From Scyliorhinus canicula (lineage: Eukaryota): a stretch of DNA of 64,000 bases. The stretch spans positions 147,041,171 to 147,105,170 of the forward strand of contig NC_052157.1 in assembly GCF_902713615.1 (NCBI RefSeq). The letters run 5' to 3'. The notes beneath the pieces are model-generated. The model did no database searches. It was not told the origin of the DNA and saw only the letters and a program-made list of their open reading frames with translations. Positions 36,152 to 63,688 of this stretch are shown piece after piece. Each line of letters opens with the position of its first letter. Positions within the stretch are counted from its first letter, which is position 1. Position numbers and translations under genes: made by a program.

Positions 36152-39100
36152 TAAAAAAAAAAAAAATTTTTTATTAAAATTTTCACAAAATATAACAACA
36201 AACAACAACAAAACAACCATGGTAAAAACCCAAGAACAACACCCACCCAACTACAAAAGCAACTACAAAAACAAAAAAAAAGCAAACAACAAAAAGGAAA
36301 GAGATAACACCCGCCACATCCCACAAACCCATGTACACAATTCTCCCTCCCACCGAACCAAAAATCCCCCCCCCCCGGGTTGCTGCTGCTGCCGGCCTAT
36401 TTCCCTACCGTTCCGCCAGGAAGTCCAGGAAAGGCTGCCACCGCCTAAAGAACCCTTGTACTGATCCCCTCAGGGCAAATTTCACCTTCTCCAATTTGAT
36501 GAACCCCGCCATGTCATTGATCCAGGCCTCCACGCTTGGGGGCCTCGCATCCTTCCACTGAAGAAGAATCCTCCGCCGGGCTACTAGGGACGCAAAGGCC
36601 AGGACACCGGCCTCTTTCGCCTCCTGCACTCACGGCTCCACTGCAACCCCAAAAAGTGCGAGTCCCCAGCCTGGCCTGACCCTGGATCCCACCACCCTCG
36701 ATACCGTCCTTGCTAACCCCTTCTAAAACTCCCCCAGCGCTGGGCACGCCCAAAACATATGGACGTGGTTCGCTGGGCTCCCCGAGCACCTAGCACACTT
36801 GTCTTCGCCCCCGAAAAAACTTCTCATCCTCATCCCAGTCATGTGGGCCCTATGCAGCACCTTGAACTGTATGAGGCTAAGCCTCGCACAGGAAGAGGAG
36901 GAATTCACTCTCTCCAGGGCATCCGCCCACGTCCCCTCCTCTATCTCCTCACCCAGCTCCTCTTCCCATTTACCCTTCAGTTCCTCCACTGAGGCCTCGT
37001 CTACCTCCTGCATTACCCGGTATGTGTCCGAAATCCTCCCTCCGCCAACCCACACCCCTGAGAGCACCCTGTCCTGTACCCCACGTGGGGGCAACAAGGG
37101 GAACCCCTCCATCTGCCGCCTGGCAAACGCCCTAACCTGCATGTACTGAAACATGTTCCCCGGGGGGAGCCCAAACTTCCCCTCTAACTCCCCCAAGCTC
37201 CCGAACCTCCCCTCCACAAACAGGTCCCTCAACCTCCTAACCCCTACCCTGTGCCATCCCAGATATCCGCCACCAATGCTCCCTGGGACAAATCGATGGT
37301 TCCCTCGTATCGGGGCCTCCATCGAGCCCCCCACTTCTCTCCATTGCCCCCAAATTTTGAGGGTAGCCGCCACCACCAGGCTTGTGGTATACCTCGTTGG
37401 AGGGAGCAGCCACGGCGCCGTTACCAGCGCCTCCAGACTCGTGCCCACACAGGATGCCATCTCCATCCTCTTCCATGCTGCCCCTTCCCTGTCCATTACC
37501 CACTTACGCACCATCGTTGCATTGGCAGCCCAATAGTACTCACAGAGGTTGGGCAGCACCAGCCCGCCCTATCCCTGCCCCGTTCCATGAAAGCCCTTCT
37601 CACCCTCGGAGTCCCATGCGCCCACACAAATCCTGTAATGCTCCTGTTGACCCTCCTAAAAAAGGCCTTCGGGATAAGGACGGGGCGGCACTGGAACAGG
37701 AACAAAAGCCTCGGGAGCACCGTCACCTTGACTGTTGCACCCTACCCGCCAGAGACAGCGGCAACATATCCCACCTTTTGAACTCCTCTTCCATCTGCTC
37801 CACCAACCTTGTGAGGTTGAGCTTGTGCAGGGCCCCCCAGCTCCCAGCCACCTGGACTCCTAGGTACCTGAAGTACTTCCCTGCCTGCTTCAGTGGGAGC
37901 CTACCAATCCCCTCCTCCTGATCCCCCGGGTGCACCACGAACAACTTGCTCTTGCCCAGGTTCAGCTTACACCCAGAGAAGCCCCCAAATTCACTAAGAA
38001 TCCTGATCATCCTCCGGCATCCCCCCACCGGGTTCGCCACATACAGCATCAGGTCATCCGCATAAAGCGACACTCGATGCTCCTCCCCACCCTGCACCAG
38101 GCCACTCCAGTTCCCTGACTCCCTCAATGCCATGGCCAGGGGCTCAATCGCCAACGCAAAAAGCAAAGGGGACAGGGGACACCCCTGTCTCATCCCCTGG
38201 TACAGCCGAAAGTACTCCGACCTCCTCCTATTTGTGGCTACACTCGCCATCGGGGCCTCATAGAGCAACCTCACTCAACGGACAAACCCCTCCCCAAACC
38301 CAAACCTTTCCAACACCTCCCACAGATACCCCCACTCAACTCTATCAAAGGCCTTCTCCGCATCTAATGCCACCACAATCTCCGCCTCCCCTTCCACAGC
38401 CGGCATCATAATAACGCTGAGGAGCCTTCGTATGTTTGTATTCAACTGCCTTCCCTTCACAAACCACGTCTGGTCCTTGTGAATGACCCCCGGCACACAA
38501 TCCTCTATTCTTGTGGCTAAGATCTTTGCCAGCAGCTTGGCGTCTACATTTAGTAGCGAGATCGGCCTATATGACCCCCACTGCAGAGGGTCCATGTCCC
38601 ACTTCAGGATCAAGGAAATCAGCGCCCGTGACATAGTTGGTGGCAAAGCCCCCCCCCCCCCCCCCCCCCTTGCCTCGTTAAAGGTTCGGACCAACAGGTC
38701 CGCATACCTTTTATAAAATTCGGCCGGAAACCCATCCGGCCCCGGCGCCTTCCCGACTGCATGCTCCCTATCCCTTTGACCAGCTCCTCCAGCTCGATCG
38801 GCGCCCCCAGTCCCTCCACCTGCCCCTCCTCCACCCTCGGAAATCGCAGCTTGTCCAAGAAGCGCCCTATTCCACCCCCCTCCACCGGGGGTTCAGACCG
38901 GTACAGTTCCCCATAAAAGTCCCTAAAGACCCCATTAACGTCTAGCCCCCTCCGCACCACATTCCCAACTCTAATCTCCCTGGTCGCGTCCCGCTTTCGG
39001 AGCTGGTGTGCCAGCATCCTGCTTGCCTTCTCCCCATATTCATACACCGCCCCCTGTGCTTTCCTCCACTGAGCTTCTCCCTTTCTGGTAATCAATAGGT

Positions 39101-41462
39101 TGAACCTGGCCTGAAGGCTATGCCTCTCCCCCAGCAATCCCCCCTCCGGAGCCTCCGCATATCTCCTATCCACCCTCACCATCTCCCCTATCAGTCTCTC
39201 CCTCTCCCTCTGCTCCCCCCTCTCCCTATGGGTTCAGATGGAAATCAATGCCCCTCTAATCACCGCCTTCAAATGCCTCCCAGACCGTCCCCACTCGGAC
39301 CTCCCCGTTATCGTTGGCCTCAAGGTACCTCTCAATACACCCCCGAACCCTCCCGGCCACCTCCTCATCTGCCAGCAGCCCCACCTCCAAGCGCCAGAGT
39401 GGACGTTGGTCCCTCTCCTCCCCCAGCCCGAGGTCCACCCAGTGCGGGGCATGATCCGAAATGGCAATGGCAGAGTATTCCACATCCTCCACCCTCGAAA
39501 CCAGCCCCCTGCTCAGGACAAAAAAAATCATTCCTCGAATAGGCCTTATGCACGTGGGAGAAAAACGAGTACTCCCTGGCCCTTGGCCTCGCAAACCTCC
39601 AGGGATCCACCCCTCCCATCTGATCCATAAATCCCCTCAACACCTTAGCCGCCGCTGGCCTCCTACCCGTCCGGGACTTGGATCGATCCAATGGGGGATC
39701 CAGCACCGGGTTGAAGTCCCCCCCCCCATGATCAGGCCCCCCACCTCCAGGTCCGGAATACGGCCCAATACCTCCAGGTCCGGAATGCGGCCCAACATGC
39801 GCCGCATAAACCCCGCATCGTCCCAATTTGGGGTGTAAATATTCACCGACACCACCCGCTCCCCCTGCAGCTTACCACTCACCATCAAATACCTCCCACC
39901 ACTGTCAGCCACCACCCTCAACGCCTCAAACGACACCCTCTTTCCCACCAGGATTGCCACCCCCCGATTCTTCTCATCCGCCTTCAGCTCCTTTAAGTGC
40001 GCAAACACCCGGGCCCGTTTGACTGGCCCATTCAGTCCCATCACATTCCAGGTTATCAGCCGGATCAGAGGGCTCCCTGCCCCCCTCCCCTGCCGATTAG
40101 CCATAACCCATCCCCTGCCCACCACTGGCCAGCGCCCCCTGCTCGGCCCGTTCCCCATGGCGGCAACTACCCCGCCCCCTGCACCCCCTGCATCCTCCAG
40201 CTCCTTCCTGGCCATTTCAGCAGCAACCCGGTACCCCCCCCCCCCCCCCCCCCCCAAAGGCTAGGACCCCTCCTAGCTGCGCCCCTCCCTCCATAGCACT
40301 CCCGTGAGCCAGCTAACTTCTGCTGACCCCGGCGGCTCCCGCCACACCTCCGACTCCTCCCCACGTGGGACTACACCTCCTTCTTCGTGCCAATCAGCAG
40401 GCCCCCCCCCCCCCCCCACTGCTCTTGCGCGGGAAAGTAACAGCCAGCAACGGCCCGCGCTTCTCAGCCCCGACTCCGCCCCCATCATTCCACAGCGCGG
40501 GAAACCAGAGAAAAGCCGCGCTTTTGCCCTGCCCAACCCCGCCTCCTCTAGGGCAACTCCCATTGCCGGTCCCCACCACCAGCTCCCCGCACTCCCAGTT
40601 TACCTCCCTGCCCGAACCCGTCCACCAGACCCATACAAAAAGATATAACGACACCCACCCACCCTAAAGCCAACACAAATCTTGCATTAAACAGAGGACC
40701 CCCCCCCCCCCCCCGAGCAAAAATCAAACCCAATTACATTATCATACAAAATCCCCCAACTTTGACCCTCAGTTTGAGTCCAGTTTCTCGGCCTGCACAA
40801 AGGCCCACGCCTCCTCCGGGGACTCAAAATAATGGTGCCGGTCCTTGTAGGTGACCTACAGACGTGCCGGCTGCAACATGCCAAACTTCACGCTCCGTCT
40901 GTGGAGCACCGCCTTCGTCCGGTTGAACCCGGCCCTCCGCTTAGCCACCTCCGCACTCCAGTCCTGGAAGATCCGCACCTCCGTGTTCTCCCACTTGCTG
41001 CTCCGCTCCTTCTTGGCCCACCGGAGCACGGACTCTCAATCAACGAACCGGTGAAACCGCGCCAACACCGCCCGTGGCGGCTCGTTCTGCTTGGGCCTCC
41101 TAGCCAGAATTCTGTGGGCCCCCTCCAACTCCAGGGGCCCCTGGAAGGACACAGCCCCCATCAACGAGTTCAGCATAACGACCACATAGGCCGCCAGGTC
41201 CGACCCCTCCAGCCCCTCCGTGAGGCCCAGGATCCGCAAATTCTTCTGCCTCGACCGGTGGTCCAGCTCCTCGAGCCGCTCCTGCCACCTTTCATGGAGC
41301 TCCTCGTGCATCTCCACCTTCCCTGCCACGGCCACGGCCTCATCCTCCCTTGCGGAGGCCTGTTGCTGCAGCTCCCGGATCGCGGCCCCCTCTGGGCTGT
41401 CTGAGTCTCCATCAGCTCTCTGGTGGTAGCCTTCAGCGACTCCAGCAGCTCCACCGGAAGTC
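36152..41462 (-). mobile_element. Decayed near-full-length L1 (second subfamily) with frameshifts and internal deletions
   Basis: 18-bp TSD CTTTCAAATGTACATATT at 36134-36151 and 41463-41480. Fragmented ORF1 (40765-41450) and ORF2 (36405-40104) across several frames. 27-bp in-frame tandem duplication near 39744-39797. Confidence 0.92.
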
Positions 41463-46095: not shown

Positions 46096-46967
46096 GCGGA
46101 GGAGGCATCAGTAGAGGAGCTGAAAGCTAAGTGGGAGGGGAAACTGGGGGAACAGATCGAAGACGGGACATGGGCTGATGCTCTGGAGAGGGTTAATTCT
46201 TCCTCCTCGTGTGCGCGGCTTAGCCTCATCCAGTTCAAGGTGCTGCACCGGGCCCACATGACTGGGACGAGGATGAGTAGGTTCTTTGGGGGTGAAGACA
46301 GGTGTGTCAGGTGCTCGGGGAGTCCAGCGAACCATGCCCATATGTTCTGGGCATGCCCGGCACTGGAGGAGTTCTGGAAGGGGGTGGCGAGGACGGTGTC
46401 GAGGGTGGTGGGATCCAGGGTCAAGCCAGGATGGGGACTCGCGATTTTTGGGGTTGGGGTGGAGCCGGGAGTGCAGGAGGCGAAAGAGGCCGGTGTGCTG
46501 GCCTTTGCGTCCCTAGTAGCCCGGCGAAGGATCTTGCTATAATGGAAGGATGCGAGGCCCCCAAGCGTGGAGACCTGGATCAATGATATGGCGGGTTTCA
46601 TTAAGCTCGAGAAGGTCAAATTCGCCCTGAGAGGGTCGGTACAAGGGTTCTTTAGGCGGTGGCAACCTTTTCTCGACTTTCTGGCTCAACGATAGGGTAC
46701 AGGGACAGTAGCAGCAGCAACCCGGGGGGGAGGGGGGGAAGGGGGAGGGAAAAGGGGGGGGGGGGCGGTCAATGACTATGTTTGTTTATTTAATTTTAAT
46801 TTATTTTTAAGTTCTTTTGGTGTTCATTGGGGTTGGGGGGTGGGGGGATGGGATACATATGGTCTGGGGGTGTTACAGTTATTATGGGTTGTTTTGTTGC
46901 ATTTCATTGCTTGTCGTTATGTTTTATATTTTCTGTAAAAAATTCCAATAAAAATTATATTTAAAAA
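46096..46967 (+). mobile_element. 5'-truncated L1 (ORF2 C-terminus plus 3'UTR) in tapasin-like intron 2
   Basis: 15-bp TSD AAAAATAGCTGGCCA at 46081-46095 and 46968-46982; TT/AAAA target; AATAAA plus poly(A); peptide LIQFKVLHRAHM...CVRC...HMFWAC. Confidence 0.92.
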
Positions 46968-47402: not shown

Positions 47403-47614
47403 ACGGTTGAAGAGTAATATTTCAAGATATGAATGCCCTGGCTGTTTGCCTTTCTATCACAAGGTACAACAGGAAGATTTGCAGAATCTTACAATTTAGG
47501 AGGATTAGCGAAATGTGTTTTTAGCATTGGGACCCAGCTTTCTGTGAAGGATTTGCATGGTTTCCCGTTAACTTGCTGTTTGATTATTATGAGACTCTTC
47601 CTCCTTATTCACAG

Positions 47615-48854: not shown

Positions 48855-49075
48855 GGGCAGCACGGTGGCGCAGTGGTTAGCACTGCTGCCTCACGGCACT
48901 GAGGTCCCAGGTTCGATCCCGGCTCTGGGTCACTGTCCGTGTGGAGTTCGCACATTCTCCCGTGCTTGCCTGTGTTTCGCCCCCACAACCCAAAGATGTG
49001 CAGGCTAGGTGGATTGGCCACGCTAAATTGCCCCTTAATTGGAAAAAATGAATTGGGTACTCTAAATTTTTTTTT
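48855..49075 (+). mobile_element. Short V-SINE variant with a 13-16 bp TSD
   Basis: TAAATGGCCTAAT at 48838-48850 and 49076-49088. Confidence 0.85.
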
Positions 49076-49879: not shown

Positions 49880-50250
49880 CTCCCTCCAGGAACATCTGGC
49901 CGCGAGAGGCCCAGGTTAATGCTATGGGGAACACAGGTTCGAATCCCACCACAGCAGCTGGTAGAACCTGAATTCAGTCAATAAATCTGGAATTGAAAGC
50001 TAGTCTCAGCGATGGTGACCATGACAACTATCACCGGTTGTTGTAAAAACCCATCTGGTTCACTAATACCCTCTGGGGAAGGAAATCTGCCATCCTTACC
50101 TGGTCTGGCCTACATCTGACTCCAGACACCCAGCAATGTGATTGACTCGTAACTGCTCTCTGAAATGACCCAGCAAGCCACTCAGTTCAAAGGGCAATTA
50201 GGGGTTGGCAACAATTGCTAACTTTGCCAGTGACATCCACATTCCCCGAA
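49880..50250 (+). mobile_element. tRNA-headed SINE sharing its 3' tail with the 54895-56065 LINE
   Basis: B-box GGTTCGAATCCC; tail GGGCAATTAGGGGTTGGCAACAA...GCCAGTGACATCCACATTCCC. Confidence 0.6.
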
Positions 50251-50289
50251 AAAAATAAAGAAAAATCAGCTCACGGTATGACTCCGCAA

Positions 50290-50615
50290 GCACCAATTAA
50301 ATAAATGACTTATGATCGGCATTTAGTGGTGCGGGTTGAGAGGTAAATGTTGACTTGGGACACTCCTCCAGACTCAAAACGTGAGCTGCCTTTTCTCTCC
50401 ACAGCCTCTTGTTTTGCTGTTCTTCAAATAGTGCCATCCCTTCTGTCCATCTCAGAAGGCAGACAGGGGCTGAAAAACTGCACTCCTGACACTGGTGCAC
50501 TCCCTCAATACGGCGCTGAAACATCATCCACAACCATATGCTCAAGTGTCTGCCAGGAGTCTCAAACTGATAACCCGTTGCCTCAGAGGCAGACCACTAT
50601 GCAATGAAATTTAGC
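50290..50615 (-). mobile_element. DeuSINE 5' and central fragment
   Basis: CTTCAAATAGTGCCATCCC and CACTCCCTCAATAC segments are reverse complements of the 4150-4550 copy. Confidence 0.55.
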
Positions 50616-50859
50616 AGTGATACATTGGTTGCTAACATGCCCATCACAGCGTAAGTTCTATTTTTCTGCAGCACCAGCTGGGAGCCGTGCTTAGTGTCCA
50701 CACCTCCCCAGTGGAACCACAAGATTGGTGAATTTACCCTTATAAGCCAGCAGTAGACTGGAATGGAACAAGGGTGATGGACTAATTGGATAGTTCACCC
50801 TCAGATCCATCATAAATACCATGGGCCAAATGATGCCCTCCTCTGCTGGATGGTTCATA

Positions 50860-51502
50860 GAACCATGGAATAGAATCATAAAATCACTGCAGTGCAGAAG
50901 GAGGCCATTTGGCCCATCAAGTCTGCACCAACACCCTGAAAGGGCACTCCATCTAAGGTCAGGCCCCCACACTAAACCCATAACCCAGTAACCCGACCGA
51001 ACCTAAACTAATGGACACCAAGGGACAATTTAGCATGGCCAATCCACCTAACGTTTGGACTGTGGGAGGAAACTGGAGCAGCCGGAATTGAACCCGGGTT
51101 CCTGGCACTGTGAGCAGTAGTGCCAACCACTGTGCCACCTTGCCACCCCTGTGAATTTAGTTAGAGTGACGGTAGCATGGTGGTTAGCGTAAATGCTTCA
51201 CAGCTCCAGAGTCCCAGGTTCGGTTCCCGGCTGGGTCACTGTCTGTGCGGAGTCTGCACGTCCTCCCCGTGTGTGCGTGGGTTTCCTCCGGGTGCTCCGG
51301 TTTCCTCCCACAGTCCAAAGATGTGCGGGTTAGGTGGATTGGCCATGCTAAATTGCCCGTAGTGTCCTAAAAAGTAAGGTTAAGGGAGTTGTTTGGGTTA
51401 CAGGTATTGGGTGGATACGTGGGGTTGAGTAGGGGGATCATTGCTCGGCACAACATCGAGGGCCGAAGGGCCTGTTCTGTGCTGTACTGTTCTATGTTCT
51501 AT
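50860..51502. mobile_element. Two divergent V-SINEs: 50860-51148 (-) and 51166-51502 (+, TTCTATG tail)
   Basis: Heads face away from each other; two different tails. Confidence 0.82.
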
Positions 51503-52211
51503 GCGAATAGTGATAGATTCATTCTCTTCAATGTCTGGACAATATGGTGAAGCAGACTAAAAAAGCAAATCACATGTACATCCATAACTTCGAGGACAAG
51601 GAGCTGAATTTCATTGGGAAATCATCTAGGGTTAGGTCCAGATTGGGGTGAGGTGGGGAAAACCCTCAGGTGCCATTTTCTATCTATCTAGCTATCTTGG
51701 CAGATTATTTTACTTGTGCTCACATGCTGAATTGTACACACCAGCAGTGCATACGAGTTTAACACGATCAGGTGTGGAACAGTGATTTTGGGTAAACAGC
51801 TGCTCGAAAGGCCCCATTCCCATGCTACACGAGGTTATAGGCACCATCGGATTCATGGAGTTCAGATCGCGAGACAGCAGTGGTCATTGTCTGCCATTAA
51901 CATTGCTCGAGTAGAGTCCTTTGACCTGCACTATTGTGGTACCACGTGGATATGGGCCTGGACTGTACTCCTGCTGTAGGGATAAGTGAGCTGAAGTTAG
52001 CAATGCAAGCCCAAGGAGGCGACACAGGGATGATGCTGTCCCTTGTTGCGAAATGAACAAGTGCTGAGCCTTCACAGAAAGGTAGTACAGTCCTAGTCCT
52101 GCCACTCGCAAACACATTCCTGGCAGATACATTAAACACATGCTTTTTTTAAACCTGTGTTTTTAAAGTATGTAAGTGTGTTACATATGACTGTATGTGA
52201 AAATATCGGCA

Positions 52212-52995
52212 ACCATAGAATCAACAGTGGAGAAGGAGGCCATTCGGACCAACGAGACTGCACCGGCCCCTTGGAAAGAGCACCCTACTTAAGCCCGTGC
52301 CTCCACCCCATCCCTGCAACCCAGCAACCCCACCTAACCAAAGGGCAGCACGGTAGCATTGTGGATAGCACAATTGCTTCACGGCTCCAGGGTCCCAGGT
52401 TCAATTCCCGGCTTGGGTCACTGTCCGTGCGGAGTCTGCACATCCTCCCCCTGTGTGCGTGGGTTTCCTCCGGGTGCTCCGGTTTCCTCCCACAGTCCAA
52501 AGATGTGCAGGTTAGGTGGATTGGCCATGATAAATTGCCCTTAGCATCCAAAATTGCCCTTAGTGTTGGGTGGGGTTACTGGGTTATGGGGATAGGGTGG
52601 AAGTGTTGACCTTGGGTAGGGTGCTCTTTCCAAGAGCTGGTGCTGACTCGATGGGCCGAATGGCCTCCTTCTGCACAGTAAATTCTATGATAATCTATGA
52701 TTAATCTAGGACAAAGGTTTGGCACAACATCGTGGGCCAAAGGGCCTGTTCTGTGCTGTATTTTTCTATGTTCTATGTTCTAACCTTTTTGGACACTAAG
52801 GGCAATTTATCGTGGCCAATCCACTAACCTGCACGTCTTTGGACTGTGGGGCGGAAACCGGGGCACCCGGAGGAAACCCACGCAGACTAGGGGAGAACGT
52901 GCAGACTCCGCACAGACAGTGACCCAAGCCGGGAATTGAACCTGGAATCCTGGAGCTGTGAAGCAACAGTGCTAACCACTGCTACCATGCCGCTT
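52212..52995. mobile_element. Nested V-SINEs: a + copy (52343-52779) with a double tail inside a - copy
   Basis: CTAACC duplicated at 52334-52339 and 52780-52785; the outer element resumes seamlessly. Confidence 0.82.
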
Positions 52996-53141
52996 GAAAA
53001 GAGGAAAGTGGAGAAGAATTAGAAAGGATTTTTAAAGAAAAATGTACACTTAAAAAAATTGGTAGAGTCATGTTCTCATCGGAAGACTATTAATCCAATT
53101 TAATTCTGTTTAAAGGGATTGAAAACTACAAGTCCTAAGGG

Positions 53142-53144
<3 letters not shown>

Positions 53145-53186
<42 letters not shown>
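53145..53186. repeat. Poly(G) run of 42 nt
   Basis: Direct count. Confidence 0.9.
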
Positions 53187-53187
<1 letters not shown>

Positions 53188-53351
53188 GCTGGGAGGGGAT
53201 CCTGCCCGGCCTTAAGTGTTAACAAACCTATAAAATGTTATGTATGTACAGTAACGTCATTGCAGTGTTAATGTAAGCCTACCTGTGACAATAATGAAGA
53301 TTATTATTATCATTATTATAGTGATAAATTAATTTGCTTCTTTCGTTGCAG

Positions 53352-53678
53352 AGTCGCCCATTGTCTCTGTGGGCCATGATTCACTTTCCCTGAAGGAGGG
53401 GGAAGAACAGAAGCTGGCATGTGAGTCGGGGCGCTATTATCCACTCGATGTCACGGTGAAGTGGCTGCGGCAGCAGGGTGAGGGGCATATGCTGCCCGTC
53501 TACATGACCAACGTCATTTTCTCCACCCACAGGCGGAACAAGGATGGTACCTACAACATTACCAGTTTCTTCAGGTTCACCGCCTCCCTCACGGACAATG
53601 ACGTTACATACGTGTGCCGGGTTGAGCACATCAGCTTGGCGAAACCGATCAAGCGTTACATCCATGTAAAAGTAGAGG
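53352..53678 (+). CDS. TAPBPL: Tapasin-family gene exon 5, IgC1 domain
   Basis: Acceptor ttcgttgcag| and donor GAGG|gtaagc; 327 nt. LAC...YYPLDVTVKW...DGTYNITS...YVCRVEHISL. Confidence 0.92.
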
Positions 53679-53809
53679 GTAAGCAATGAGGGGAATCTTA
53701 TGACGCTGTTCGCTTAAAATTGTTACAGAGTGTTTCACAGAGTCGACATGCATTGAAATCTGATGCCATGATGGATGTTCATGTCGCAATTCCCGCTCAG
53801 ATTGATATA

Positions 53810-53997
53810 TTTTTTTAAAAGGGGCAATTTAGCGTGGCCAATCCACCTACGCTGCACATCTTTGGGTTGTGGGAGTGAGACCCATGCAGGCACGGGGAGA
53901 ATGTGCAAACTCCGGGACAGTGACCCGGGGTTGGGATTGAACCCGGGTCCTCAGCGCCACGAGGCAGCAGTGCTAACCGTTGTGCCGCCGTGCCGCC
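53810..53997 (-). mobile_element. Short A-tailed V-SINE variant
   Basis: Shortened central domain ending AAATTGCCCCTTTTAAAAAAA. Confidence 0.8.
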
Positions 53998-54894
53998 AGC
54001 TCTCAGATTGATATTGAATCAATGGCAATTTTATGAGAATGCCCATTAATTCACCTAATGTTGCAACCATTTTACAACCAACCTGGCCCCTTGAATTAAA
54101 CTGATTAAGATTGTCCAAAGGTCCACCGTTAGTATACGTTTGCTGCCTGACAAGGCCCTCATAATCTGTTTCAGTCAGGAGAAAGGAGCTGAGCAAACTA
54201 TAAATTTGGCACATTTTATTCCAGTTACTCTGCATTCATTTCCAATTTGGAGAATTTGCTAAGTTCTTGTAATACTTCATGTCCTTTGCAAGTATGGTGA
54301 AGAATGTAAAAATTATAGCAAGAAAAGTTTGTGCAATGACCTTGTTGCTGTAGGCTGTACTTTTTCTGTACCGAGCGTGGTTCACTCTCCATTGTCATCA
54401 GCAACCACTCCTGTAGCCTGCTTGGGTGTGGTATTAATGGCTCTACATCCTCGTGTGGCAATTGTCAATGTCACCTCAAGATCTCCTGGCAGGAAAGGGC
54501 TGGTCAGCGTTTTTCCTTTCCTGCTCTATTCTCCCACATCCCCGGATTCCCTGAGGGCAGCTGGAAAAAGATGGAGAAAAGTCGTACCAGGGATAAAGCA
54601 AGAAACCCCATTGATGAAAAGGTTTCAGCAACTACTCCACGTGTCACACATGGAAAGACTAGGGAATGGAGAACCCTAGTCATTCTACTGAAGAAATCAT
54701 TCACTATTTCTGCTCTTCTGCAGGATTGACCGCAAAAAGGTATAGCACCTGTGTTTGAAAAGGCAAAGAAAGCTGACTGAGATGGGATAAAATGATAGAA
54801 ACTCTTGTCGGGTTTATGCTGGAGGACTGCCGATATAGCTGAAGAGTCAGCGAGCATGGATTTAACAATGAAAGATCCTGCTCTTAAATTTTAA

Positions 54895-56065
54895 AAAATT
54901 CTTTCACGGGATATGGGGGTCCCTGGCTGGGCCAGCGTTTATTGCCCACCCCGAAAATCCTTCGAGAAGATGGTGGTGAGCCGTCTTCGTGAACCGCTGT
55001 GGTCCATGTGTGTAGGTACACCCACAGTGCTGTTAGGAAGGGGTTTCCAGGATTTTGACCCAGCGACAGTGAAGGAACAGCGATATAGTTCCACGCCAAG
55101 ATGATGAGTGACTTGGAGGGGAACCTGCAGGTAGTGGGGTTCCCATGCATCTGCTGGCCTTGTCCTTCGCAGTGGTAGAGGTTGCAGAAGGTGCTGTTGA
55201 AAGAGCCCTAGCAAATTGCTGCAGTGCATCTTGTAGTTGGTACACGCTGCTGCTATTGTGTGCCGGTGGTAGAAGGAGTCAGAGTTGAAGGTGATAGACG
55301 GAGTGCTAATTAAGGATGTGCTGTTGAGCTTCTTGAGTGTTGTTGGAGCTGCATTCATCCAGATAAGTGGAGAGTGTTCCATCACAGTACTGACTTGTGC
55401 CTTGTCGATGGTGGACAGGCCTTGCGGAGTCAGGAGGTGAGTTACTCGCTGTAGCATTACTGCTTTTGCAGCCACAGTATTTAAATAGCTGGTACCGTTC
55501 AGCTTCTGATCAACCTCCAGGATATTGACAGTGGGGGAATTCAGCGATGGTAATGCCATTTAAGGGGGAATGGTTGGGGAATCATTGTCTGGCACTTGTG
55601 TGGCATGAATGTTACTTGTCACTTGTCAGTCCAAGCCTGAATGCTGCCCAGGCCTTGCTGCATTTGGACGTGGTCTGCTTCAGTTTCTGAGAGTCGCAAA
55701 TGGTGCTGAACATTGTGCAGTCATCAGCGAACATCTCCACTTCTGACCTTATGATAGAGGGAAGGTAATTGATGAAGCAGCTGAAAATGGTTGAGTCGAG
55801 GGCATTACCCTGAGGAACTCCTGCAGTGATATCCTGAGACTGAGATGATTGACCGCCAAGATGGCAACCATCTTTCTTTGTGCTCTATTTGACTCCAGCC
55901 AGTGGAGAGTTTCCCCTGATTTCCATTGACTTCAAGTTTGCTCGGACTCCTTGATGCCACACTCTGGACAAATGCTGTCTTATGTCCAGGGCAGTCACTC
56001 TCAGCTCATCTCTTGAGTTCAAATGTTTTATCCATGTTTGGACCAAGATTGTTATGAGATCAGGA
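54895..56065 (-). mobile_element. CR1/L2-group LINE 3' fragment in tapasin-like intron 5
   Basis: Peptide HLLTPQGLSTI.KAQV..VMEHSPL.WM.AAPTTLKKL...SF.VAGSKSW..LPNS; tail GGGCAATAAACGCTGGCC...CCCGTGAAAGAAT. Confidence 0.75.
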
Positions 56066-56446
56066 GATGTAGTGAGGTCAAATTCTTTGAGGCAATGGCA
56101 AACAAACGGTGGGATTCCTTGTGATATAGTTTAACTGGATTTTCAAACAGTTGTTAGCAATTTCGACAAGAAAGATTTATAACAAAAGGAAACCCATGAG
56201 AATTAAAGGTAAAATATGGGGACTGGACATGAATAAATAGTTGGGAATAAAGAGTGTAAAATGTACAGTGTTAGCAGGAGTGGAGATGATGAATAGCATA
56301 TCCCAGGGTTCTGCCCTTGGAACCTTTGTATTAATATGAATGACCCTGGTTGCAGAAATCACTGTAAGCTTCAGTGATCAGATAATTATCAAGTAGAAGA
56401 GAACGGAAAAAACATACGGTTAATTCTGTGAAAATGTATTTATGAT

Positions 56447-56722
56447 GGCACAGTGGTTAGCACTGCTGCCTCCAAGGACTCGGGTTCAATTCCAGCCTTG
56501 GGTGACTGTGTGGAGTTTGCACGTTCTCCCTGTGTCTGCGTAGGTTTCCTCCAGGTGCTCCAGTTTCCTCCCACAGTCCAAAGTTATGTAGGTTAGTTGG
56601 ATTGACCATGATCGATGAACATGGTTACGAGGATAGGGCCCAGGTAGAGTGCTGTTTTGGAGGGTCGGTACAGACTTGATGGACTGAATGGCCTACTTCT
56701 GCACTGTGGGGATTCTATGGAT
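56447..56722 (+). mobile_element. V-SINE, degenerate, upstream of the TM exon
   Basis: GGCACAGTGGTTAGCACTG head to CTGCACTGTGGGGATTCTATG tail. Confidence 0.8.
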
Positions 56723-56949
56723 TAGCAACAGAGCAAACAAATCATATTTAATTCTACCAAATGCAGAACATAACAGTGAAAAATGTTTTTTGGTTTTTGG
56801 AGACATTGGTTTGAAGATAAATGGTGACCAGGGCTCCCTGTCCTTCTATTTCTCCTTTTAGGAGAGTTCCTCTTTGCAATGTACACATTGACATGTGATA
56901 GAAGTCTCAAAAAAACTGACACTCATGATTTTATCTTTTGATTCCACAG

Positions 56950-57042
56950 CACAACCTCAGATACTTCTGTTCGTCTTAGGTTCAATTGCAATCCTAGTTC
57001 TCGGCTTTTTTCTGGTCACCCTACTGATTCAAATAACAAAAG
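56950..57042 (+). CDS. TAPBPL: Tapasin-family gene exon 6, transmembrane (AQPQILLFVLGSIAILVLGFFLVTLLIQITK)
   Basis: Acceptor ttccacag| and donor AAAG|gtgagt; 93 nt, phase 1 to 1. Hydrophobic span of about 23 aa. Cytoplasmic-tail exon(s) not found and probably lie beyond the window. Confidence 0.85.
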
Positions 57043-58028: not shown

Positions 58029-58204
58029 CCGGCGAACCGACAGTCAGACCAACTTATCATTTCTAGCAGCGTCCTCGGGCAGGCCTTGCCCGTGCCACCA
58101 GCCGCTACCGTACTTCCTTCGTCGTTGTCCCCCCTCCCCCCCCCCCCTCCCCCCCTCCCGCCCTCCCCTCCCCTCCCGGGTTGCTGCTGTCATGGCCTCA
58201 GTTT

Positions 58205-61200
58205 CTATCTCTGATCCAAGAGGTCTAGGAAGGGTTGCCATCGCCTGGAAAACCCCTGCACCGACCCTCTCAGGGCGAATTTGATCCTTTCCAGTTGGAT
58301 GAAGTTTGCCATGTCGTTTAACCAGGTGTTAACACTCGGAGGCCTTTCGTCCCTCCACTGAATCAGGATCCTCCTCCGAGCCACCAAGGACGCAAAGGCT
58401 AATATTCCAGCCTCCCTCGCCTCCTGTACCCCCGGTTCCACCCCAACCCCGAAGATCGCAAGTCCCCATCCTGGCTTGACCCTGGACCCCACCACTCTCG
58501 ACACCGTCCCTGCCACCCCCTTCCAGAACTCCTCCAGTGCCGGACATGCCCAAAACATATGTGCATGATTCGCAGGGCTTCCCGAACATCTAATACACCT
58601 GTCTTCACCCCCGAAAAACCGACTCATCCTTGTCCCCGTCATGTGGGCTCTATGCAGTACCTTAAATTGAATGAGACTTAGTCTCGCACATGACGACGAC
58701 GAGTTGACCCTCTCCAGGGCGTCTGCCCATGTCCCGTCCTCTATCTGTTCCCCCAGCTCTAACTCCCACTTATCTTTCAGCTCCTCTACTGGTACCTCCT
58801 CCACCTCCTGCATAATCTTATAGATGTCCGAGATCTTCCCCTCCCCGACCCAGACCCCTGATAGCACCCTATCACTCACCCCCCTGTCGGGGAGCGCGGG
58901 GAACCCCGCTACCTGTCGTCTGGCAAATGCCTTCACTTGGAGGTACCTGAACGTGTTCCCCGGGGGGAGCCCAAATTTCTCCTCCAGCTCTCCCAGGCTC
59001 GCAAACCTCCCCTCTATAAACAAGTCCCTCAGTTGTCTAATACCCGCCCTCTGCCAGCTCTGGAATCCCCCTCCTGTGTTTCCCGGCGCAAATCTGTGGT
59101 TCCCTCTTAGTGGTGCCCCTATCAGACCTCCCACTTCCCCCCTGTGTCGCCTCCACTGCCCCCAGATCTTGAGGGTGGCCGCCACCACCGGGCTCGTGGT
59201 ATACCTCGTGGGAGGGAGCGGCCATGGTGCCGTTACCAGTGCCCCTAAGCTTATGTTGCCGCAGGACGCCCTCTCCATGCGCTTCCAGGCTGCCCCCTCC
59301 CCTTCCATCATCCACTTTCGTACCATCGATGTATTTGCCGCCCAGTAATATCCTGAAAGGTTGGGTAACGCCAGCCCTCCACTATCCCTACTCCGCTCCA
59401 AAAAGACCCTTCTAACTCTCGGGGTGCCATGTGCCCACACATACCCCATGATACTACTCGTTACCTTCTTGAAAAAGGCCCTGGGGAGGAAGATGGGCAG
59501 ACACTGGAACAAAAACAAGAACCTCGGGAGGACCGTCATTTTAACTGACTGCACCCTCCCTGCCAGCGACAGCGGCACCATGTCCCACCTCTTAAACTCC
59601 TCCTCCATCTGCTCCACCAGTCTGGAAAAGTTCAACTTGTGTAGGGTCCCCCAGTTCTTTGCCACCTGCACCCCCAAATACCTAAAACTTTTAACTGCTC
59701 TTTTGAAGGGGAGCCTCCCAATTCCCTCCCCTTGGTCTCCCGGGTGTATTACAAAGACCTCACTTTTCCCCAGATTTAATTTATATCCCGAAAAGTCCCC
59801 GAACTCCGCTAGTATCCCCATTACCTCCGGCATTCCCCCCTCCGGGTCTGCCACATACAACAACAAATCATCCGCATAGAGCGAGACCCGATGTTCCTCC
59901 CCTCCCCTTGTCAGTCCTCTCCACCCCCCTGAACCCCTCAGTGCCATCGCCAACGGCTCAATCGCTAATGCAAAGAGTAAGGGAGATAGGGGACATCCCT
60001 GCCTAGTACCTCGATGGAGCCCAAAATATTCTGACCTCCTCCCGTTTGTTACCACACTTGCCATCGGAGCTGAATAGAGCAGTTTTACCCACTTGATAAA
60101 TCCCTCCCCAAACCCAAACCTTTCCAACGTCTCCCACAAGTATTCCCACTCCACCCTGTCAAATGCCTTCTCCGCGTCCAGCGCTACCACTATCTCCGCC
60201 TCCCCTTCCACTGCTGGCATCATAATCACATTTAACAATCTCCGGACATTTGTGTTAAGTTGGCGTCCCTTCACGAACCCCGTCTGGTCTTCATGGACTA
60301 CCCCTGGCACACAGTCCTCTATCCTGGTTGCCAGGACCTTTGCTAACAGCTTGGCATCTACATTTAAGAGGGAGATAGGCCTGTAGGACCCGCACTGGAC
60401 CGGGTCCTTGTCCCGCTTCAAAATCAAGGAGATCAGGGCCTGCGACATTGTTGGAGGCAGAACCCCCCCCTCGCGCGCCTCATTGAAGGCTCGCACCAGC
60501 ACTGGACCCACCAAGTCCACAAATTTCCTGTAAAACTCCACCGGGAACCCATCCGGCCCCGGCGCCTTCCCCGCCTGCATCTGGCCTATCCCTTTAATTA
60601 GCTCCTGCAGCTCTATCGGCGCCCCCAACCCTTCCACCAGCTCCTCCTGTACCTTTGGGAACCCCAATTTGTCGAGAAAGTTCTTCATTCCCCCTCTCCT
60701 CTTCGGCGGTTCAGACCTATACAATTCCCTATAGAAGTCCCTAAAGACCCTATTCACCTCTTGCCCCTTCTGCACTACATCCCCACCCCTCTCTCTCACT
60801 CCCCCAATCTCTCTGGCTGCATCTCGCTTACGAAGCTGGTGCGCCAGCATCCTGCTCGCCTTTTCCCCGTACTCATACGCCGCACCCTGCGCCCTTCTCC
60901 ACTGCATTTCCGCCTTCCTAGTGGTCAGTAGGTCGAACCTGGCCTGCAAGCTACGCCGCTCCCTTAATAGCCCCTCCTCTGGCGCCGCCGCATATTTCCT
61001 ATCTACTTCTAGGAGCTCCCCCACCAGCCTCTCCCTTTCCTGCCTCTCCTTCCTCTCTCTGTGTGCCCTTATGGAGATCAGCTCTCCTCTAATCACTGCT
61101 TTCAAGGCCTCCCAGACCGTCCCCACCTGCACCTCACCTGTGTCATTCGTACCCAGATAGTTCTCAATGCCCGTTCTCACCCTTCTGCACACCTCTTCGT

Positions 61201-61999
61201 CCGCCAACAGCCCTACATCCAGGCGCCACAACGGGCGTTGGTCCCGCGCCTCCCCCATGTCCACGTCCACCCAATGTGGTGCATGGTCCGATATCGCAAT
61301 GGCCGAGTACTCCGTGTCCTGCACTCTCGGTATCAGCCCCCTGTTCAATACGAAAAAATCGATCCTAGAGTACACTCTGTGGACGTGGGAGAAAAAAGAA
61401 TACTCCCTCGCCCTAGGCCTACCAAATCTCCATGGGTCTACCCCTCCCATCTGCTCCATGAACCCCCTTAACACCTCTGCCGCTGCCGGCCTCCTATTCG
61501 TCCTGGAACTCGATCTATCCAGCCCAGGGTCTAACACCGTATTAAAGTCCCCTCCCATGATCAGGCCCCCTGCCTCCAGTCCCGGGATGAGGCCCAGCAG
61601 GCGCCTCATAAAACCCGCGTCGTCCCAGTTCGGGGCATACACATTTACCAGTACCACACTCTCTCCCTGCAGCCTACCCCTCACCATCACGTACCTGCCC
61701 TCCTTGTCTGCCACCACCTCTGCCGCCACAAACGACACTCTCTTTCCCACCAAAATCGCCACCCCCCGGTTCTTGATATCCAAGCCTGAGTGGAACACCT
61801 GTCCCACCCACCCCCTTCTCAGGCGGACCTGATCTGCTACCCTCAAATGAGTCTCCTGCAGCATTGCTACATCAGCCTTCAGTCCCTTCAGGTGTGAGAA
61901 GACCCTTGATCTTTTGACCGGCCCATTCAGCCCCCTTACGTTCCACGTGATCAATCGGGTCGCAGAGCGACCCGTCCCTACTCCCTGTCGATTAGCCAT
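58205..61999 (-). CDS. L1 ORF2p: APE endonuclease, reverse transcriptase and C-terminal Cys/His knuckle (1264 aa)
   Basis: TWNVRGLN, LQETH, GGDFN, SRID and SDH endonuclease motifs; PGPDG, QGCPLSP and YADD RT motifs; C-terminal CxxC...H.FW.C. No stops. Confidence 0.97.
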   Translation of the reverse strand: MANRQGVGTGRSATRLITWNVRGLNGPVKRSRVFSHLKGLKADVAMLQETHLRVADQVRLRRGWVGQVFHSGLDIKNRGVAILVGKRVSFVAAEVVADKEGRYVMVRGRLQGESVVLVNVYAPNWDDAGFMRRLLGLIPGLEAGGLIMGGDFNTVLDPGLDRSSSRTNRRPAAAEVLRGFMEQMGGVDPWRFGRPRAREYSFFSHVHRVYSRIDFFVLNRGLIPRVQDTEYSAIAISDHAPHWVDVDMGEARDQRPLWRLDVGLLADEEVCRRVRTGIENYLGTNDTGEVQVGTVWEALKAVIRGELISIRAHRERKERQERERLVGELLEVDRKYAAAPEEGLLRERRSLQARFDLLTTRKAEMQWRRAQGAAYEYGEKASRMLAHQLRKRDAAREIGGVRERGGDVVQKGQEVNRVFRDFYRELYRSEPPKRRGGMKNFLDKLGFPKVQEELVEGLGAPIELQELIKGIGQMQAGKAPGPDGFPVEFYRKFVDLVGPVLVRAFNEAREGGVLPPTMSQALISLILKRDKDPVQCGSYRPISLLNVDAKLLAKVLATRIEDCVPGVVHEDQTGFVKGRQLNTNVRRLLNVIMMPAVEGEAEIVVALDAEKAFDRVEWEYLWETLERFGFGEGFIKWVKLLYSAPMASVVTNGRRSEYFGLHRGTRQGCPLSPLLFALAIEPLAMALRGSGGWRGLTRGGEEHRVSLYADDLLLYVADPEGGMPEVMGILAEFGDFSGYKLNLGKSEVFVIHPGDQGEGIGRLPFKRAVKSFRYLGVQVAKNWGTLHKLNFSRLVEQMEEEFKRWDMVPLSLAGRVQSVKMTVLPRFLFLFQCLPIFLPRAFFKKVTSSIMGYVWAHGTPRVRRVFLERSRDSGGLALPNLSGYYWAANTSMVRKWMMEGEGAAWKRMERASCGNISLGALVTAPWPLPPTRYTTSPVVAATLKIWGQWRRHRGEVGGLIGAPLRGNHRFAPGNTGGGFQSWQRAGIRQLRDLFIEGRFASLGELEEKFGLPPGNTFRYLQVKAFARRQVAGFPALPDRGVSDRVLSGVWVGEGKISDIYKIMQEVEEVPVEELKDKWELELGEQIEDGTWADALERVNSSSSCARLSLIQFKVLHRAHMTGTRMSRFFGGEDRCIRCSGSPANHAHMFWACPALEEFWKGVAGTVSRVVGSRVKPGWGLAIFGVGVEPGVQEAREAGILAFASLVARRRILIQWRDERPPSVNTWLNDMANFIQLERIKFALRGSVQGFSRRWQPFLDLLDQR

Positions 62000-62842
62000 G
62001 TCTTGTCCCTTGCTCGCCCCGGGTCATCCCTTCTTTTCTGACCCGCTTCCCATAGCGATGGCCCCCCCCCCCCCCCCACCCCCCCCGGCTCTCCCCTTCT
62101 CGTCCCTGGTCTTTCTAGCAGCAACCCGGTGTCCCCCCCCAGGTCCCCCCCCCCCCCCCCCCCCCTGGCTAGGACCCCTCCTAGCCGCGATGTACCCCAC
62201 ATCGTACTCCCGAGAGTCAGCTGGTCTCCGCTGACCCGGCTGCTCCTGCCACATTCCGACTCCTCCCGGTTCACCCCATCTGCGCCCGTGAAAGATCCCC
62301 TTAAAACCCCCGAGAAAGACCCGCATAGTCAACCCGCTCCCCCCCGTCCCGTCTCCCCAACTTAACGATATAAATACAAATACCCAATGGCAACTAAATA
62401 CATAAATACTTAACTACATACTTAAATAACAAAATAATTAACTAACTATCAACTAACAGTGTGCCCAACCATCACCCTCCATCAAACAGTATAAATAACC
62501 GCAGATAACCATAACCCGAAAAGAAAAAAAAGAACAAAAAACCCCCCCAAGCACCCAAAGAAAAAGGGTAAGAGGGGTAAATAACTAAGGGAAATTGGAA
62601 ACGGGAAAAAACACCCCATAAGAAGCCAACGACCCACAATAGAGATTTCAACAGTACAAATATACAGAAACACCCAACAACTCGAAACCTTCAAAATATT
62701 CAGAAAAGTCAACCGTTCGAGAAAAAACACCCCAAACACTCCACGAAACTGTTACCCAGTTCCGACCTGGCCTGAAAAAGAAAAGGGCCACTTGCACAAT
62801 CCAGAGTCCCCCGGCGGCTACGACCGCCGGTGCTCCCAGGTT

Positions 62843-63688
62843 TTAGTTCGTGTCCAACTTTTCCTCTTGTACAAAGGTCCAGGCCTCCTCTGGGGACTCG
62901 AAATAATGATGTTGGTCCTTGTAGGTGACCCACAAGCGCGCCGGTTGCAACATTCCAAATTTGATCTTTTTCGCGTGTAGCACCGCCTTTGTCCGGTTGT
63001 ACCGGGCCCGCCGCTTTGCCACCTCCGCACTCCAGTCCTGGTACACCCTTACCGTCGAGTTCTGCCACTTGCTGCTTTTCTCCCTTTTAGCCCACCTCAG
63101 GACTTTCTCTCGATCACTTAGCCGCTGGAACCGCACCAGCACCGCCCTCGGGGGCTCGTTTGCCCTAGGCCTCCTGGCCATGACCCGGTATGCCTCTTCC
63201 AATTCCAGGGGCGCCGGACCGGCCCCTTCCCCCATCAGGGAGCTCAACATCTCCGCCACATATCCCGGGAGATCCGACCCCTCCAGGCCTTCTTCCAGGC
63301 CCAGGATCCTCAAATTTTTCCTCCTCATCCGAGTGTCCAGCTCCTCGAAGCGGCTCTGCCACTTCATGTGGAGTGCCTCGTGCACCTCCACCTTTGCCCC
63401 GATGACTGTGGCCTCCTCCTCCCTCGCGGCCATCTCCTGCTGCAGATCTTTAATCGACGCCTCTTGGATCGCCTGGGCTCCCACCAACCTGGTGGCCGTC
63501 GCGTTCATGGACTCTAAGAGTTCCACTTTCATCTCCGTGAAAAAACGGAGGAGTGCGGCCTGCTGCTCCTCCGCCCATTTCTTCCACTCCTCCGGTGCAC
63601 CGCCGGCCGCCATTTTGATTTTCTTCCCCCGCTTTTTTTGGGAAGCTGCTGCCGTTTTTCTTGCCGCTCCACTCCGGGTACCGACCAT
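62843..63688 (-). CDS. L1 ORF1p (coiled coil, RRM, CTD; 281 aa)
   Basis: R.RRKNLRILGLEEG.EG, PPRAVLVRF, VYQDWS..V..RR and PARL.V..FESPEEA motifs typical of L1 ORF1p. Confidence 0.93.
   Translation of the reverse strand: MVGTRSGAARKTAAASQKKRGKKIKMAAGGAPEEWKKWAEEQQAALLRFFTEMKVELLESMNATATRLVGAQAIQEASIKDLQQEMAAREEEATVIGAKVEVHEALHMKWQSRFEELDTRMRRKNLRILGLEEGLEGSDLPGYVAEMLSSLMGEGAGPAPLELEEAYRVMARRPRANEPPRAVLVRFQRLSDREKVLRWAKREKSSKWQNSTVRVYQDWSAEVAKRRARYNRTKAVLHAKKIKFGMLQPARLWVTYKDQHHYFESPEEAWTFVQEEKLDTN

What the first reader, a model, noticed from the sequence alone, without database searches (positions are those of the whole stretch)
58176..62129. Conserved inverted-complementary 13-14 nt motifs bracket L1 ORF2 (candidate long-range RNA bridge)
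Seen, in element sense: CCGGGUUGCUGCU lies 117 nt upstream of the ORF2 AUG (62117-62129), and its exact complement AGCAGCAACCCGG starts 16 nt after the ORF2 stop (58176-58188). The divergent second L1 has the same pair as a 14-bp match (40218-40231, 113 nt before the AUG; 36375-36388, again 16 nt after the stop), although neighbouring spacer and UTR sequence has diverged. The truncated copy keeps the 3' motif (about 46710-46723). Both motifs abut G-rich tracts. Inference: a base-paired bridge looping out the 3.8-kb ORF2, analogous to 5'-3' bridges in RNA-virus translation. It could control ORF2 initiation or recycling, or hand nascent ORF2p to its own 3' end (cis preference). I know of no description of this in L1.
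Basis: partly seen in the sequence, partly recalled or inferred. Interest (0 to 1): 0.72.

Follow-up and report, generated by a model that had tools for sequence, protein, structure and literature searches.

The report
RNA clamp around shark L1 ORF2
Two diverged copies of a shark L1 jumping gene keep a perfectly complementary 13-14-base pair of sequences just before and just after the reverse-transcriptase gene, and several unrelated fish L1 lineages have their own different pairs at the same places, so L1 RNA probably closes this gene into a loop, which has not been described for L1.

Summary
CCGGGTTGCTGCT lies 117/113 nt before the ORF2 AUG, and its exact complement lies 16 nt after the ORF2 stop, in two minus-strand L1 copies that are only 74% identical. 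A third, truncated copy keeps the 3' arm.

- **Within the window:** the pair is the longest perfect inverted repeat in each element. It is the only reverse-complement pair among the 119 13-mers the two elements share. The 3' arm plus its G-run is the only alignable part of their 3'UTRs.
- **Chance:** a 13-mer inverted repeat in one element is not rare (15% of shuffles). The case rests on conservation and position.
- **Other lineages:** no close shark relatives could be fetched, so I tested 24 independent fish-type L1 lineages from metagenome and Logan contigs. Complementarity between the ORF2 leader and the 3'UTR head is enriched (permutation p=1e-4) only in the pairing orientation and not against ORF2-internal windows.
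- **Extended helices:** five lineages have extended or two-part helices of unrelated sequence (one of 25 bp), with 5' arms 70-148 nt before the AUG.
- **Weaker points:** two looser scoring schemes were not significant, and no compensatory change was seen within the shark family.

The function (ORF2 translation control or cis-preference) is inference. An earlier scan note reports the same clamp elsewhere in this genome.

The parts
62117..62129 (-). 5' arm of element A (CCGGGTTGCTGCT), 117 nt before the ORF2 AUG
   Evidence: Contigs of four public runs read G instead of A at the adjacent base 62116, which makes 14 bp as in B.
58176..58188 (-). 3' arm of element A (AGCAGCAACCCGG), 16 nt after the ORF2 stop
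40218..40231 (-). 5' arm of element B (14 nt), 113 nt before the ORF2 AUG
36375..36388 (-). 3' arm of element B (14 nt), 16 nt after the ORF2 stop
   Evidence: The bridge is 14/14 pairs in the MFE fold of the 4.35-kb RNA.
46712..46725 (+). 3' arm of the 5'-truncated copy C
58205..61999 (-). ORF2 of element A, intact, 1264 aa (APE endonuclease + RT); this is the segment looped out
62843..63688 (-). ORF1 of element A (281 aa, no Pfam match)
62000..62842 (-). ORF1-ORF2 spacer (843 nt, 12 AUGs). Only its last ~270 nt (ORF2 leader, 51% G) align with element B.
62167..62185 (-). Invariant hairpin GCTAGGA-GGGG-TCCTAGC in the ORF2 leader (same at 40259-40277 in B)
62133..62165 (-). G-run directly 5' of the 5' arm (outer side of the helix)
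58118..58175 (-). G-rich tract (G4 motif) directly 3' of the 3' arm (outer side of the helix)
40210..40213 (-). Possible short second helix in B: GGCC, pairing with GGCC at 36394-36397 across a small internal loop. It is broken by one mismatch in A (GACC).
   Evidence: Not significant on its own (flank-shuffle p=0.09).
62235..62248 (-). Imperfect local look-alike of the 3' arm (CAGGAGCAGCCGGG) in the leader: a weaker alternative partner for the 5' arm

Best explanation
The two motifs are the arms of a selected long-range duplex in the L1 plus-strand RNA (a panhandle).

What the helix does physically:
- The 5' arm lies in the structured, G-rich leader of ORF2, and the 3' arm lies at the head of the 3'UTR.
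- Pairing (13-14 GC-rich base pairs, about -26 to -29 kcal/mol) closes the 3.8-kb ORF2 into a loop.
- It puts the ORF2 start region next to the ORF2 stop and the 3'UTR.
- The two flanking G-tracts leave the same end of the helix side by side.

Shown:
- The complementarity exists and is conserved between diverged copies.
- Its position is conserved.
- Sequence-unrelated analogues exist in other fish-type L1 lineages.

Inferred:
- The RNA, rather than single-stranded cDNA, forms the helix.
- Its most likely job concerns ORF2p. The leader holds 12 upstream AUGs, so ORF2 cannot be reached by simple scanning.
- A helix outside the ORF is not melted by ribosomes translating ORF2, but it ties the 3'UTR to the initiation region.
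- I think it most likely delivers 3'UTR-bound factors or terminating ribosomes to the ORF2 start, in the manner of a 3' translation enhancer. It would also let nascent ORF2p emerge beside the 3' end of its own RNA (cis-preference).
For: Within the window:
- Exact arms are present in A, B and C.
- The pair is the longest inverted repeat in both A and B, and the only one found in both.
- It is the only reverse-complement pair among 119 shared 13-mers.
- The 3' arm is invariant in three copies, while the 16-19 nt between the stop and the arm diverge.
- The rest of the 3'UTR is unalignable.
- The bridge appears in the MFE of the 4.35-kb B RNA.

Across 24 independent fish-type L1 lineages (ORF2 nucleotide identity below 72% pairwise):
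- The longest perfect complement between 400 nt before the AUG and 140 nt after the stop averages 8.50 in matched pairs against 7.53 in mismatched pairs. Permutation p=1e-4.
- Direct, reverse-only and complement-only orientations are not enriched.
- Leader or 3'UTR head against ORF2-internal windows is not enriched.

Extended helices:
- Flanks of the seeds carry extra complementarity in L007 (p=0.003), L008, L010, L012 and L015. Fisher combined p=0.003.
- L007 has 21 Watson-Crick pairs, 3 G-U pairs and 1 bulge over 25 nt.
- L010 has helices of 13 bp and 8 bp.
- The 5' arms of these five lineages lie 70-148 nt before the AUG, against 127-130 in the shark.

An earlier scan note reports the same ORF2-bracketing repeat in a young intact copy elsewhere in this genome.
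Against: - There is no compensatory change within the shark family; both arms are only conserved.
- Cross-lineage enrichment depends on the metric. An ungapped helix score counting G-U pairs gives p=0.32. A gapped pairing score gives p=0.07. Both are dominated by G-run against pyrimidine-run matches.
- On the gapped score, the shark pairs themselves are unremarkable.
- Only 5 of 24 lineages show a convincing helix, so the feature is not universal.
- 3' arm positions vary from 2 to 128 nt after the stop.
- Leader against the more distal 3'UTR is also weakly enriched (p=0.03).
- The MFE of element A pairs the 5' arm with the neighbouring G-run instead.
- Sense against antisense energy does not differ from shuffles, so the strand is not established.
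- There is no structure probing, and no confirmed RNA reads.
Confidence: 0.55

Rival explanations
1. The motif is one double-stranded-DNA binding site for a host or element factor, present twice in opposite orientation. Examples would be an internal promoter or enhancer element, or an architectural site. Two copies of the same site in inverted orientation are automatically complementary, so no RNA pairing is needed.
For: Both sites are exact 13-14-bp copies and conserved. No strand preference could be shown.
Against: - Other lineages carry different arm sequences at the same places. These include a 25-nt imperfect helix whose three mismatches are all G-U on the sense strand, and two-part helices with asymmetric loops. 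Both patterns are typical of RNA helices, not of repeated protein sites.
- No match to a known motif was tested or found.
Confidence: 0.12
2. The two islands are conserved for separate reasons, and their complementarity is chance or a relic of an old inverted duplication. The 5' arm would be part of a local ORF2-leader structure or IRES-like domain. The 3' arm would be the start of the 3'UTR G-quadruplex module.
For: - The 5' arm sits in a ~200-nt block that is 73% identical, with other invariant runs of 13-19 nt.
- A local, imperfect partner exists.
- An inverted repeat of 13 nt or more occurs in 15% of shuffles of one element.
- Two of the three whole-region cross-lineage scoring schemes are not significant.
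Against: - Given two conserved islands (~200 nt and ~23 nt), a 13-nt perfect complement is expected about 3e-5 to 3e-4 times (my estimate counts).
- The G-tracts are on the same strand at both sites, so this is not a simple inverted duplication.
- The local partner is weak and worse in B.
- Enrichment specific to orientation and position is seen in 24 other lineages.
Confidence: 0.13
3. The complementarity acts during reverse transcription rather than translation. One version has it act in the single-stranded cDNA. Another has the RNA helix as a roadblock, with flanking G-runs that let the nascent C-run cDNA switch template across the helix base. That switch would skip ORF2 and produce ORF1-only (HAL1-like) copies.
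For: - Same-strand G-runs abut the outer ends of both arms.
- Three earlier notes report ORF1-only L1 derivatives in this genome.
- One has a UTR of ~740 nt, close to what a B-type junction would give (my arithmetic).
Against: - No ORF1-only copy is in this window.
- No joint between the two sites appears among the listed joints of four runs. Contigs break at the G-runs there, so this is weak evidence.
- Such a by-product would not by itself explain selection for the arms.
- Teleost-type lineages with arms often lack adjacent G-runs.
Confidence: 0.1

Closest known systems
Flavivirus genome cyclization sequences (5'CS/3'CS, UAR, DAR)
   Same: Arms of 8-14 nt, thousands of bases apart, one near the start of the coding region and one in the 3'UTR. 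The sequence differs between lineages while complementarity is kept. The polymerase is brought from a 5' element to the 3' end (established knowledge).
   Different: Here the 5' arm is internal, between two cistrons of a retrotransposon RNA, and only ORF2 is looped out. The polymerase is a reverse transcriptase that primes on nicked DNA. No functional test exists.
3' cap-independent translation enhancers and long-range bridges of plant RNA viruses (BYDV BTE, tombusvirus/luteovirus long-distance interactions)
   Same: The 3'UTR element base-pairs with a site upstream of the ORF whose translation it controls. The pairing is short and lineage-specific (established knowledge).
   Different: Those are usually loop-loop kissing contacts of 5-7 nt between hairpins. 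Here the helix is a linear one of 13-25 bp. No 3'UTR factor-binding structure was identified.
Mammalian L1 ORF2 initiation (unconventional termination/reinitiation in human L1; IRES in mouse L1) and the L1 3'UTR G-quadruplex tract
   Same: Bicistronic L1 RNA whose ORF2 needs a non-scanning start. There is a sense-strand G-rich tract at the head of the 3'UTR (papers listed; otherwise established knowledge).
   Different: - Mammalian spacers are tens of nt; here they are 600-1000 nt with 12 AUGs.
- No 5'-3' pairing has been reported for mammalian L1 in the text searched.
- I did not examine mammalian or human L1 sequence.
3' stem-loops of 'stringent' LINEs (eel UnaL2, zebrafish ZfL2, R2 3'UTR) recognised by their RT
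   Same: A conserved RNA structure in the 3'UTR of a non-LTR element, tied to cis recognition of the template (established knowledge).
   Different: Those are local hairpins at the extreme 3' end. Here one strand of the helix lies 3.9 kb away, and the element ends in AATAAA plus an A-tail like relaxed L1s.

Membership tests
L1-clade LINE retrotransposon | ORF2 with N-terminal APE-type endonuclease and RT domain | tested here: met
   Pfam Exo_endo_phos (residues 17-239, E=4.7e-15) and RVT_1 (528-779, E=2.5e-39).
L1-clade LINE retrotransposon | Separate upstream ORF1 on the same strand; bicistronic layout | tested here: met
   ORF1 at 62843-63688, with ORF2 843 nt downstream. ORF1p has no Pfam hit, so its type is open.
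L1-clade LINE retrotransposon | 3' end with poly(A) signal and A-rich tail | tested here: met
   AATAAA plus an A-run in copy C, and AATAAA in B. The 3' end of A was not resolved.
Functional long-range RNA-RNA interaction (cyclization or panhandle type) | Watson-Crick complementarity between distant segments of one RNA | tested here: met
   13 and 14 perfect pairs, 3.9 kb apart.
Functional long-range RNA-RNA interaction (cyclization or panhandle type) | Complementarity kept in diverged relatives | tested here: met
   A and B are 74% identical, and copy C keeps the 3' arm. Five of 24 other lineages have their own arms at like positions.
Functional long-range RNA-RNA interaction (cyclization or panhandle type) | Compensatory covariation between the two arms within an alignable family | tested here: inconclusive
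   - The arms are invariant in the copies available.
- No relatives at intermediate distance could be fetched.
- Only lineage-level turnover of arm sequence is seen.
Functional long-range RNA-RNA interaction (cyclization or panhandle type) | Helix forms in the RNA and matters for function | not testable with these tools
   The MFE prediction is inconsistent. The public runs are contigs of uncertain RNA or DNA origin.

The most novel reading that the evidence does not exclude
A whole clade of fish and shark L1 elements circularises the ORF2 cistron with a lineage-specific panhandle. One arm lies 70-150 nt before the AUG and the other at the head of the 3'UTR, often next to sense-strand G-quadruplex tracts. 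This would couple ORF2 termination, ORF2 re-initiation and loading of nascent ORF2p onto the 3' end of the same RNA. It would be a structural basis for L1 cis-preference, analogous to flavivirus cyclization.
Probability: 0.3. Interest if true: 0.85.

Novelty: new variant of a known kind. Interest (0 to 1): 0.66.

Why it matters
Two questions in L1 biology remain open: how the rarely translated ORF2 is initiated on a bicistronic RNA, and how ORF2p finds the 3' end of the very RNA that encoded it (cis-preference). A conserved helix that ties the ORF2 start region to the 3'UTR would give both questions a concrete RNA element that can be mutated. It would also show that retrotransposons use the genome-cyclization logic known from RNA viruses. 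The fish-type L1s, with many coexisting lineages, offer natural replicates for testing this by covariation.

Tried and rejected
Attempts to fetch close relatives:
- The exact ORF2p is not on record.
- The best protein hits are only 48% identical.
- The one catshark locus found could not be served because the file is too large.

Other approaches that gave little:
- Reads: four public runs hold thousands of contigs of this family. Contigs break at the G-runs, and the listed variants include only 62116 next to the arm. The joints at 62081-62144 are C-run slippage artefacts.
- Rfam has no match.
- MFE folding of the 4.4-kb RNAs shows the bridge in B but not in A, so I gave it little weight.
- RNAduplex on long windows is swamped by G-run pairing.
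- An ungapped helix score and a gapped pairing score were not significant. I report them as such.
- Sense against antisense stability shows no signal beyond base composition. Mismatch-type counts are too few to use.

Ideas considered and set aside:
- Inverted-duplication origin: rejected, because the G-tracts are on the same strand at both sites.
- A conserved upstream ORF in the leader: none found in A or B.
- The viral-contig scan gave one locus, which looks mammalian.

Sequences left unread:
- Loci L054, L057, L059, L060, L062-L064, L068, L087 and L094 are 28-30% identical to the query, and several come from human-gut metagenomes. I take them for human or mammalian L1. I did not read, save, compare or search them.
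- The other loci at 34% identity or below were also left unread.


Full report
**What is there**

The window holds two minus-strand L1 elements.
- Element A (57900 to beyond 64000) has an intact ORF2 (58205-61999, 1264 aa). Pfam finds the endonuclease and RT domains. ORF1 lies at 62843-63688.
- Element B (about 36150-41400) has a broken ORF2 and is 74% identical to A.
- Copy C (46098-46960, plus strand) is a 5'-truncated copy, 80% identical to A.
- A 3' fragment of a distant subfamily lies at about 5860-6358.

- CCGGGTTGCTGCT lies at 62117-62129 in A and 40219-40231 in B.
- Its complement lies at 58176-58188 in A, 36375-36387 in B and 46713-46725 in C.
- In B the match is 14 nt.
- Contigs of four public runs read G at 62116, so most copies of the family also have 14 bp.

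**Is it more than chance?**

Within one element it is not. Perfect inverted repeats of 13 nt or more occur in 31 of 200 dinucleotide shuffles of A. The weight comes from conservation and place.
- The pair is the longest inverted repeat in A and in B, and the only one found in both.
- Among 119 non-low-complexity 13-mers shared by A and B it is the only reverse-complement pair. Reverse-only and complement-only controls give none at k=13.
- The 3' arm with its G-run is the only alignable part of the A and B 3'UTRs.
- The 3' arm is invariant in A, B and C, while the 16-19 nt between stop and arm differ at about half their positions.
- The 5' arm lies in the last ~270 nt of the ORF1-ORF2 spacer. 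This is a G-rich leader, 73% identical between A and B. It also holds an invariant hairpin, GCTAGGA-GGGG-TCCTAGC. The rest of the spacer cannot be aligned.
- The G-tracts are on the same strand at the outer side of each arm. The arrangement is therefore a mirror, not an inverted duplication.

**Relatives**

No close relative could be obtained.
- The exact ORF2p is not on record. The nearest proteins are teleost-type L1 at 45-48% identity.
- A catshark locus could not be served.
- Laying contigs of four runs showed a very abundant family, but little at the arms, because contigs break at the G-runs.

I therefore asked whether other lineages of the same L1 clade have their own pairs. Contig look-ups and one metagenome scan gave full-length elements. 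I kept 24 lineages whose ORF2 DNA is under 72% identical to each other. I did not read the loci at 28-30% identity, several from human-gut metagenomes, which I take for human or mammalian L1. Other loci at 34% identity or below were also left unread.

**Cross-lineage test**

For each lineage I took the longest perfect, non-low-complexity complement between the 400 nt before the ORF2 AUG and the 140 nt after the stop. I compared each element's own pair with all mismatched pairs.
- Matched mean 8.50 against mismatched 7.53, permutation p=1e-4. Five of 24 lineages reach 10 nt or more, against 4.7% of mismatched pairs.
- The same test in direct, reverse-only and complement-only orientation is flat, with Mann-Whitney p from 0.48 to 0.49.
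- Leader or 3'UTR head against ORF2-internal windows is flat, p 0.43-0.90. Leader against the more distal 3'UTR is weakly enriched, p=0.03.
- Around the seeds, flank-shuffling shows extra complementarity in L007 (p=0.003), L008 (0.023), L010 (0.017), L012 (0.05) and L015 (0.04). Fisher combined p=0.003.

The individual helices are as follows.
- L007 pairs 1902-1925 with 5900-5924: 21 Watson-Crick pairs, 3 G-U pairs and one bulge.
- L010 pairs 2356-2366 with 6380-6390, with a second helix 2377-2384 with 6370-6377.
- L008 pairs 1458-1467 with 5376-5385, plus extensions.
- L015 pairs 1611-1620 with 5506-5515.

The arm sequences are unrelated between lineages. The 5' arms of these five lie 70-148 nt before the AUG, as in the shark (127-130). 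The 3' arms lie 9-128 nt after the stop.

**Caveats**

- Two other scores did not separate matched from mismatched pairs: ungapped with G-U pairs, p=0.32, and gapped, p=0.07.
- Their null distributions are dominated by G-runs pairing with pyrimidine runs.
- On the gapped score the shark pair itself is unremarkable.
- Most lineages (19 of 24) show nothing convincing.
- Strand (RNA sense against antisense or cDNA) could not be settled.
- MFE folding gives the bridge in B but not in A.
- There is no compensatory change inside the shark family.

**Reading**

Two conserved islands that are exactly complementary are best explained by selection for pairing. So are sequence-unrelated pairs at the same two places in several other lineages, seen only in the pairing orientation.

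I take the helix to form in the L1 plus-strand RNA and to close ORF2 into a loop. The leader has 12 AUGs before the ORF2 start, and the spacers of the whole clade are 600-1000 nt. ORF2 therefore needs a non-scanning start. A helix that lies outside the ORF survives ORF2 translation and ties the 3'UTR to the start region.

The functional step (translation enhancement or recycling, and cis-preference) is inference.

Rivals:
- one DNA-binding site in two orientations;
- independent constraints with chance complementarity;
- a role in reverse transcription, including template switching across the G-runs to give the ORF1-only copies that earlier notes report in this genome.

**Known or new**

Two full-text searches for long-range pairing in L1 or other non-LTR elements found no description of it. 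The searches on shark L1 and on ORF2 translation listed nothing on such pairing either. Rfam has no match. The mechanism class is known from RNA viruses, for example flavivirus cyclization and plant-virus 3' enhancers.

The scan had already noted the same clamp in a young intact copy elsewhere in this genome (s1-213855). That follow-up could not test conservation.

Noticed in passing
62167-62185 and 40259-40277 (minus strand); block 62000-62270: The ORF2 leader is a conserved G-rich block (73% identity between A and B over 202 nt). It contains an invariant 7-bp hairpin with a GGGG loop and a second stem kept through a U-A to U-G change. The rest of the spacer is unalignable. This may be a candidate IRES-like or reinitiation domain.
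   Followed up: partly
Spacers: window 62000-62842 and 40105-40771; loci L001, L007, L008: ORF1-ORF2 spacers are unusually long in this L1 clade (843 and 667 nt here; 600-1000 nt in teleost-type relatives). A and B each hold 12 AUGs before the ORF2 start.
   Followed up: partly
24 fish-type L1 loci (L001-L084 subset) and window elements A, B: Sense-strand G-quadruplex motifs occur in 8 of 24 ORF2 leaders and 5 of 24 3'UTR heads. None occurs in the 24 ORF2s (about 91 kb), and there are almost none on the antisense strand.
   Followed up: partly
62843-63688 (minus strand): ORF1p (281 aa) has no Pfam match, not even to the L1 ORF1 family. Relatives' ORF1 products likewise show only faint coiled-coil hits.
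   Followed up: no
L010:2378 (also L019): An in-frame ATG 41 codons before the conserved ORF2 start lies inside the second helix of the 5' arm. Pairing would therefore cover a possible alternative start codon.
   Followed up: no
L001, L009, L010, L012, L013 (just before ORF2): Gene calls of 70-106 aa end at or overlap the ORF2 start codon in several teleost-type loci (for example, ends at 2504 against a start at 2501). This hints at a stop/start overlap. No equivalent ATG-started ORF is seen in shark A or B.
   Followed up: partly
P0143/P0144 (Scyliorhinus torazame mTERF4 isoforms): Their first 54 residues are 70% identical to ORF2p residues about 1122-1175. This is an exonised L1 fragment in a catshark gene model.
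   Followed up: partly
46098-46960 (plus strand): Truncated L1 copy C lies inside the stretch that another reader noted as a tapasin-family gene (43014-57042), presumably in an intron.
   Followed up: no
5860-6358 (minus strand): A 3' fragment of a distant L1 subfamily (50% aa identity) has a G-rich 3'UTR head but no arm motif. Its 5' part is missing, so whether it has its own pair cannot be told.
   Followed up: partly
L054, L057, L059, L060, L062-L064, L068, L087, L094: These metagenome and viral-collection contigs are 28-30% identical to the query, and several come from human-gut samples. I take them for human or mammalian L1. They were left unread and uncompared.
   Followed up: no
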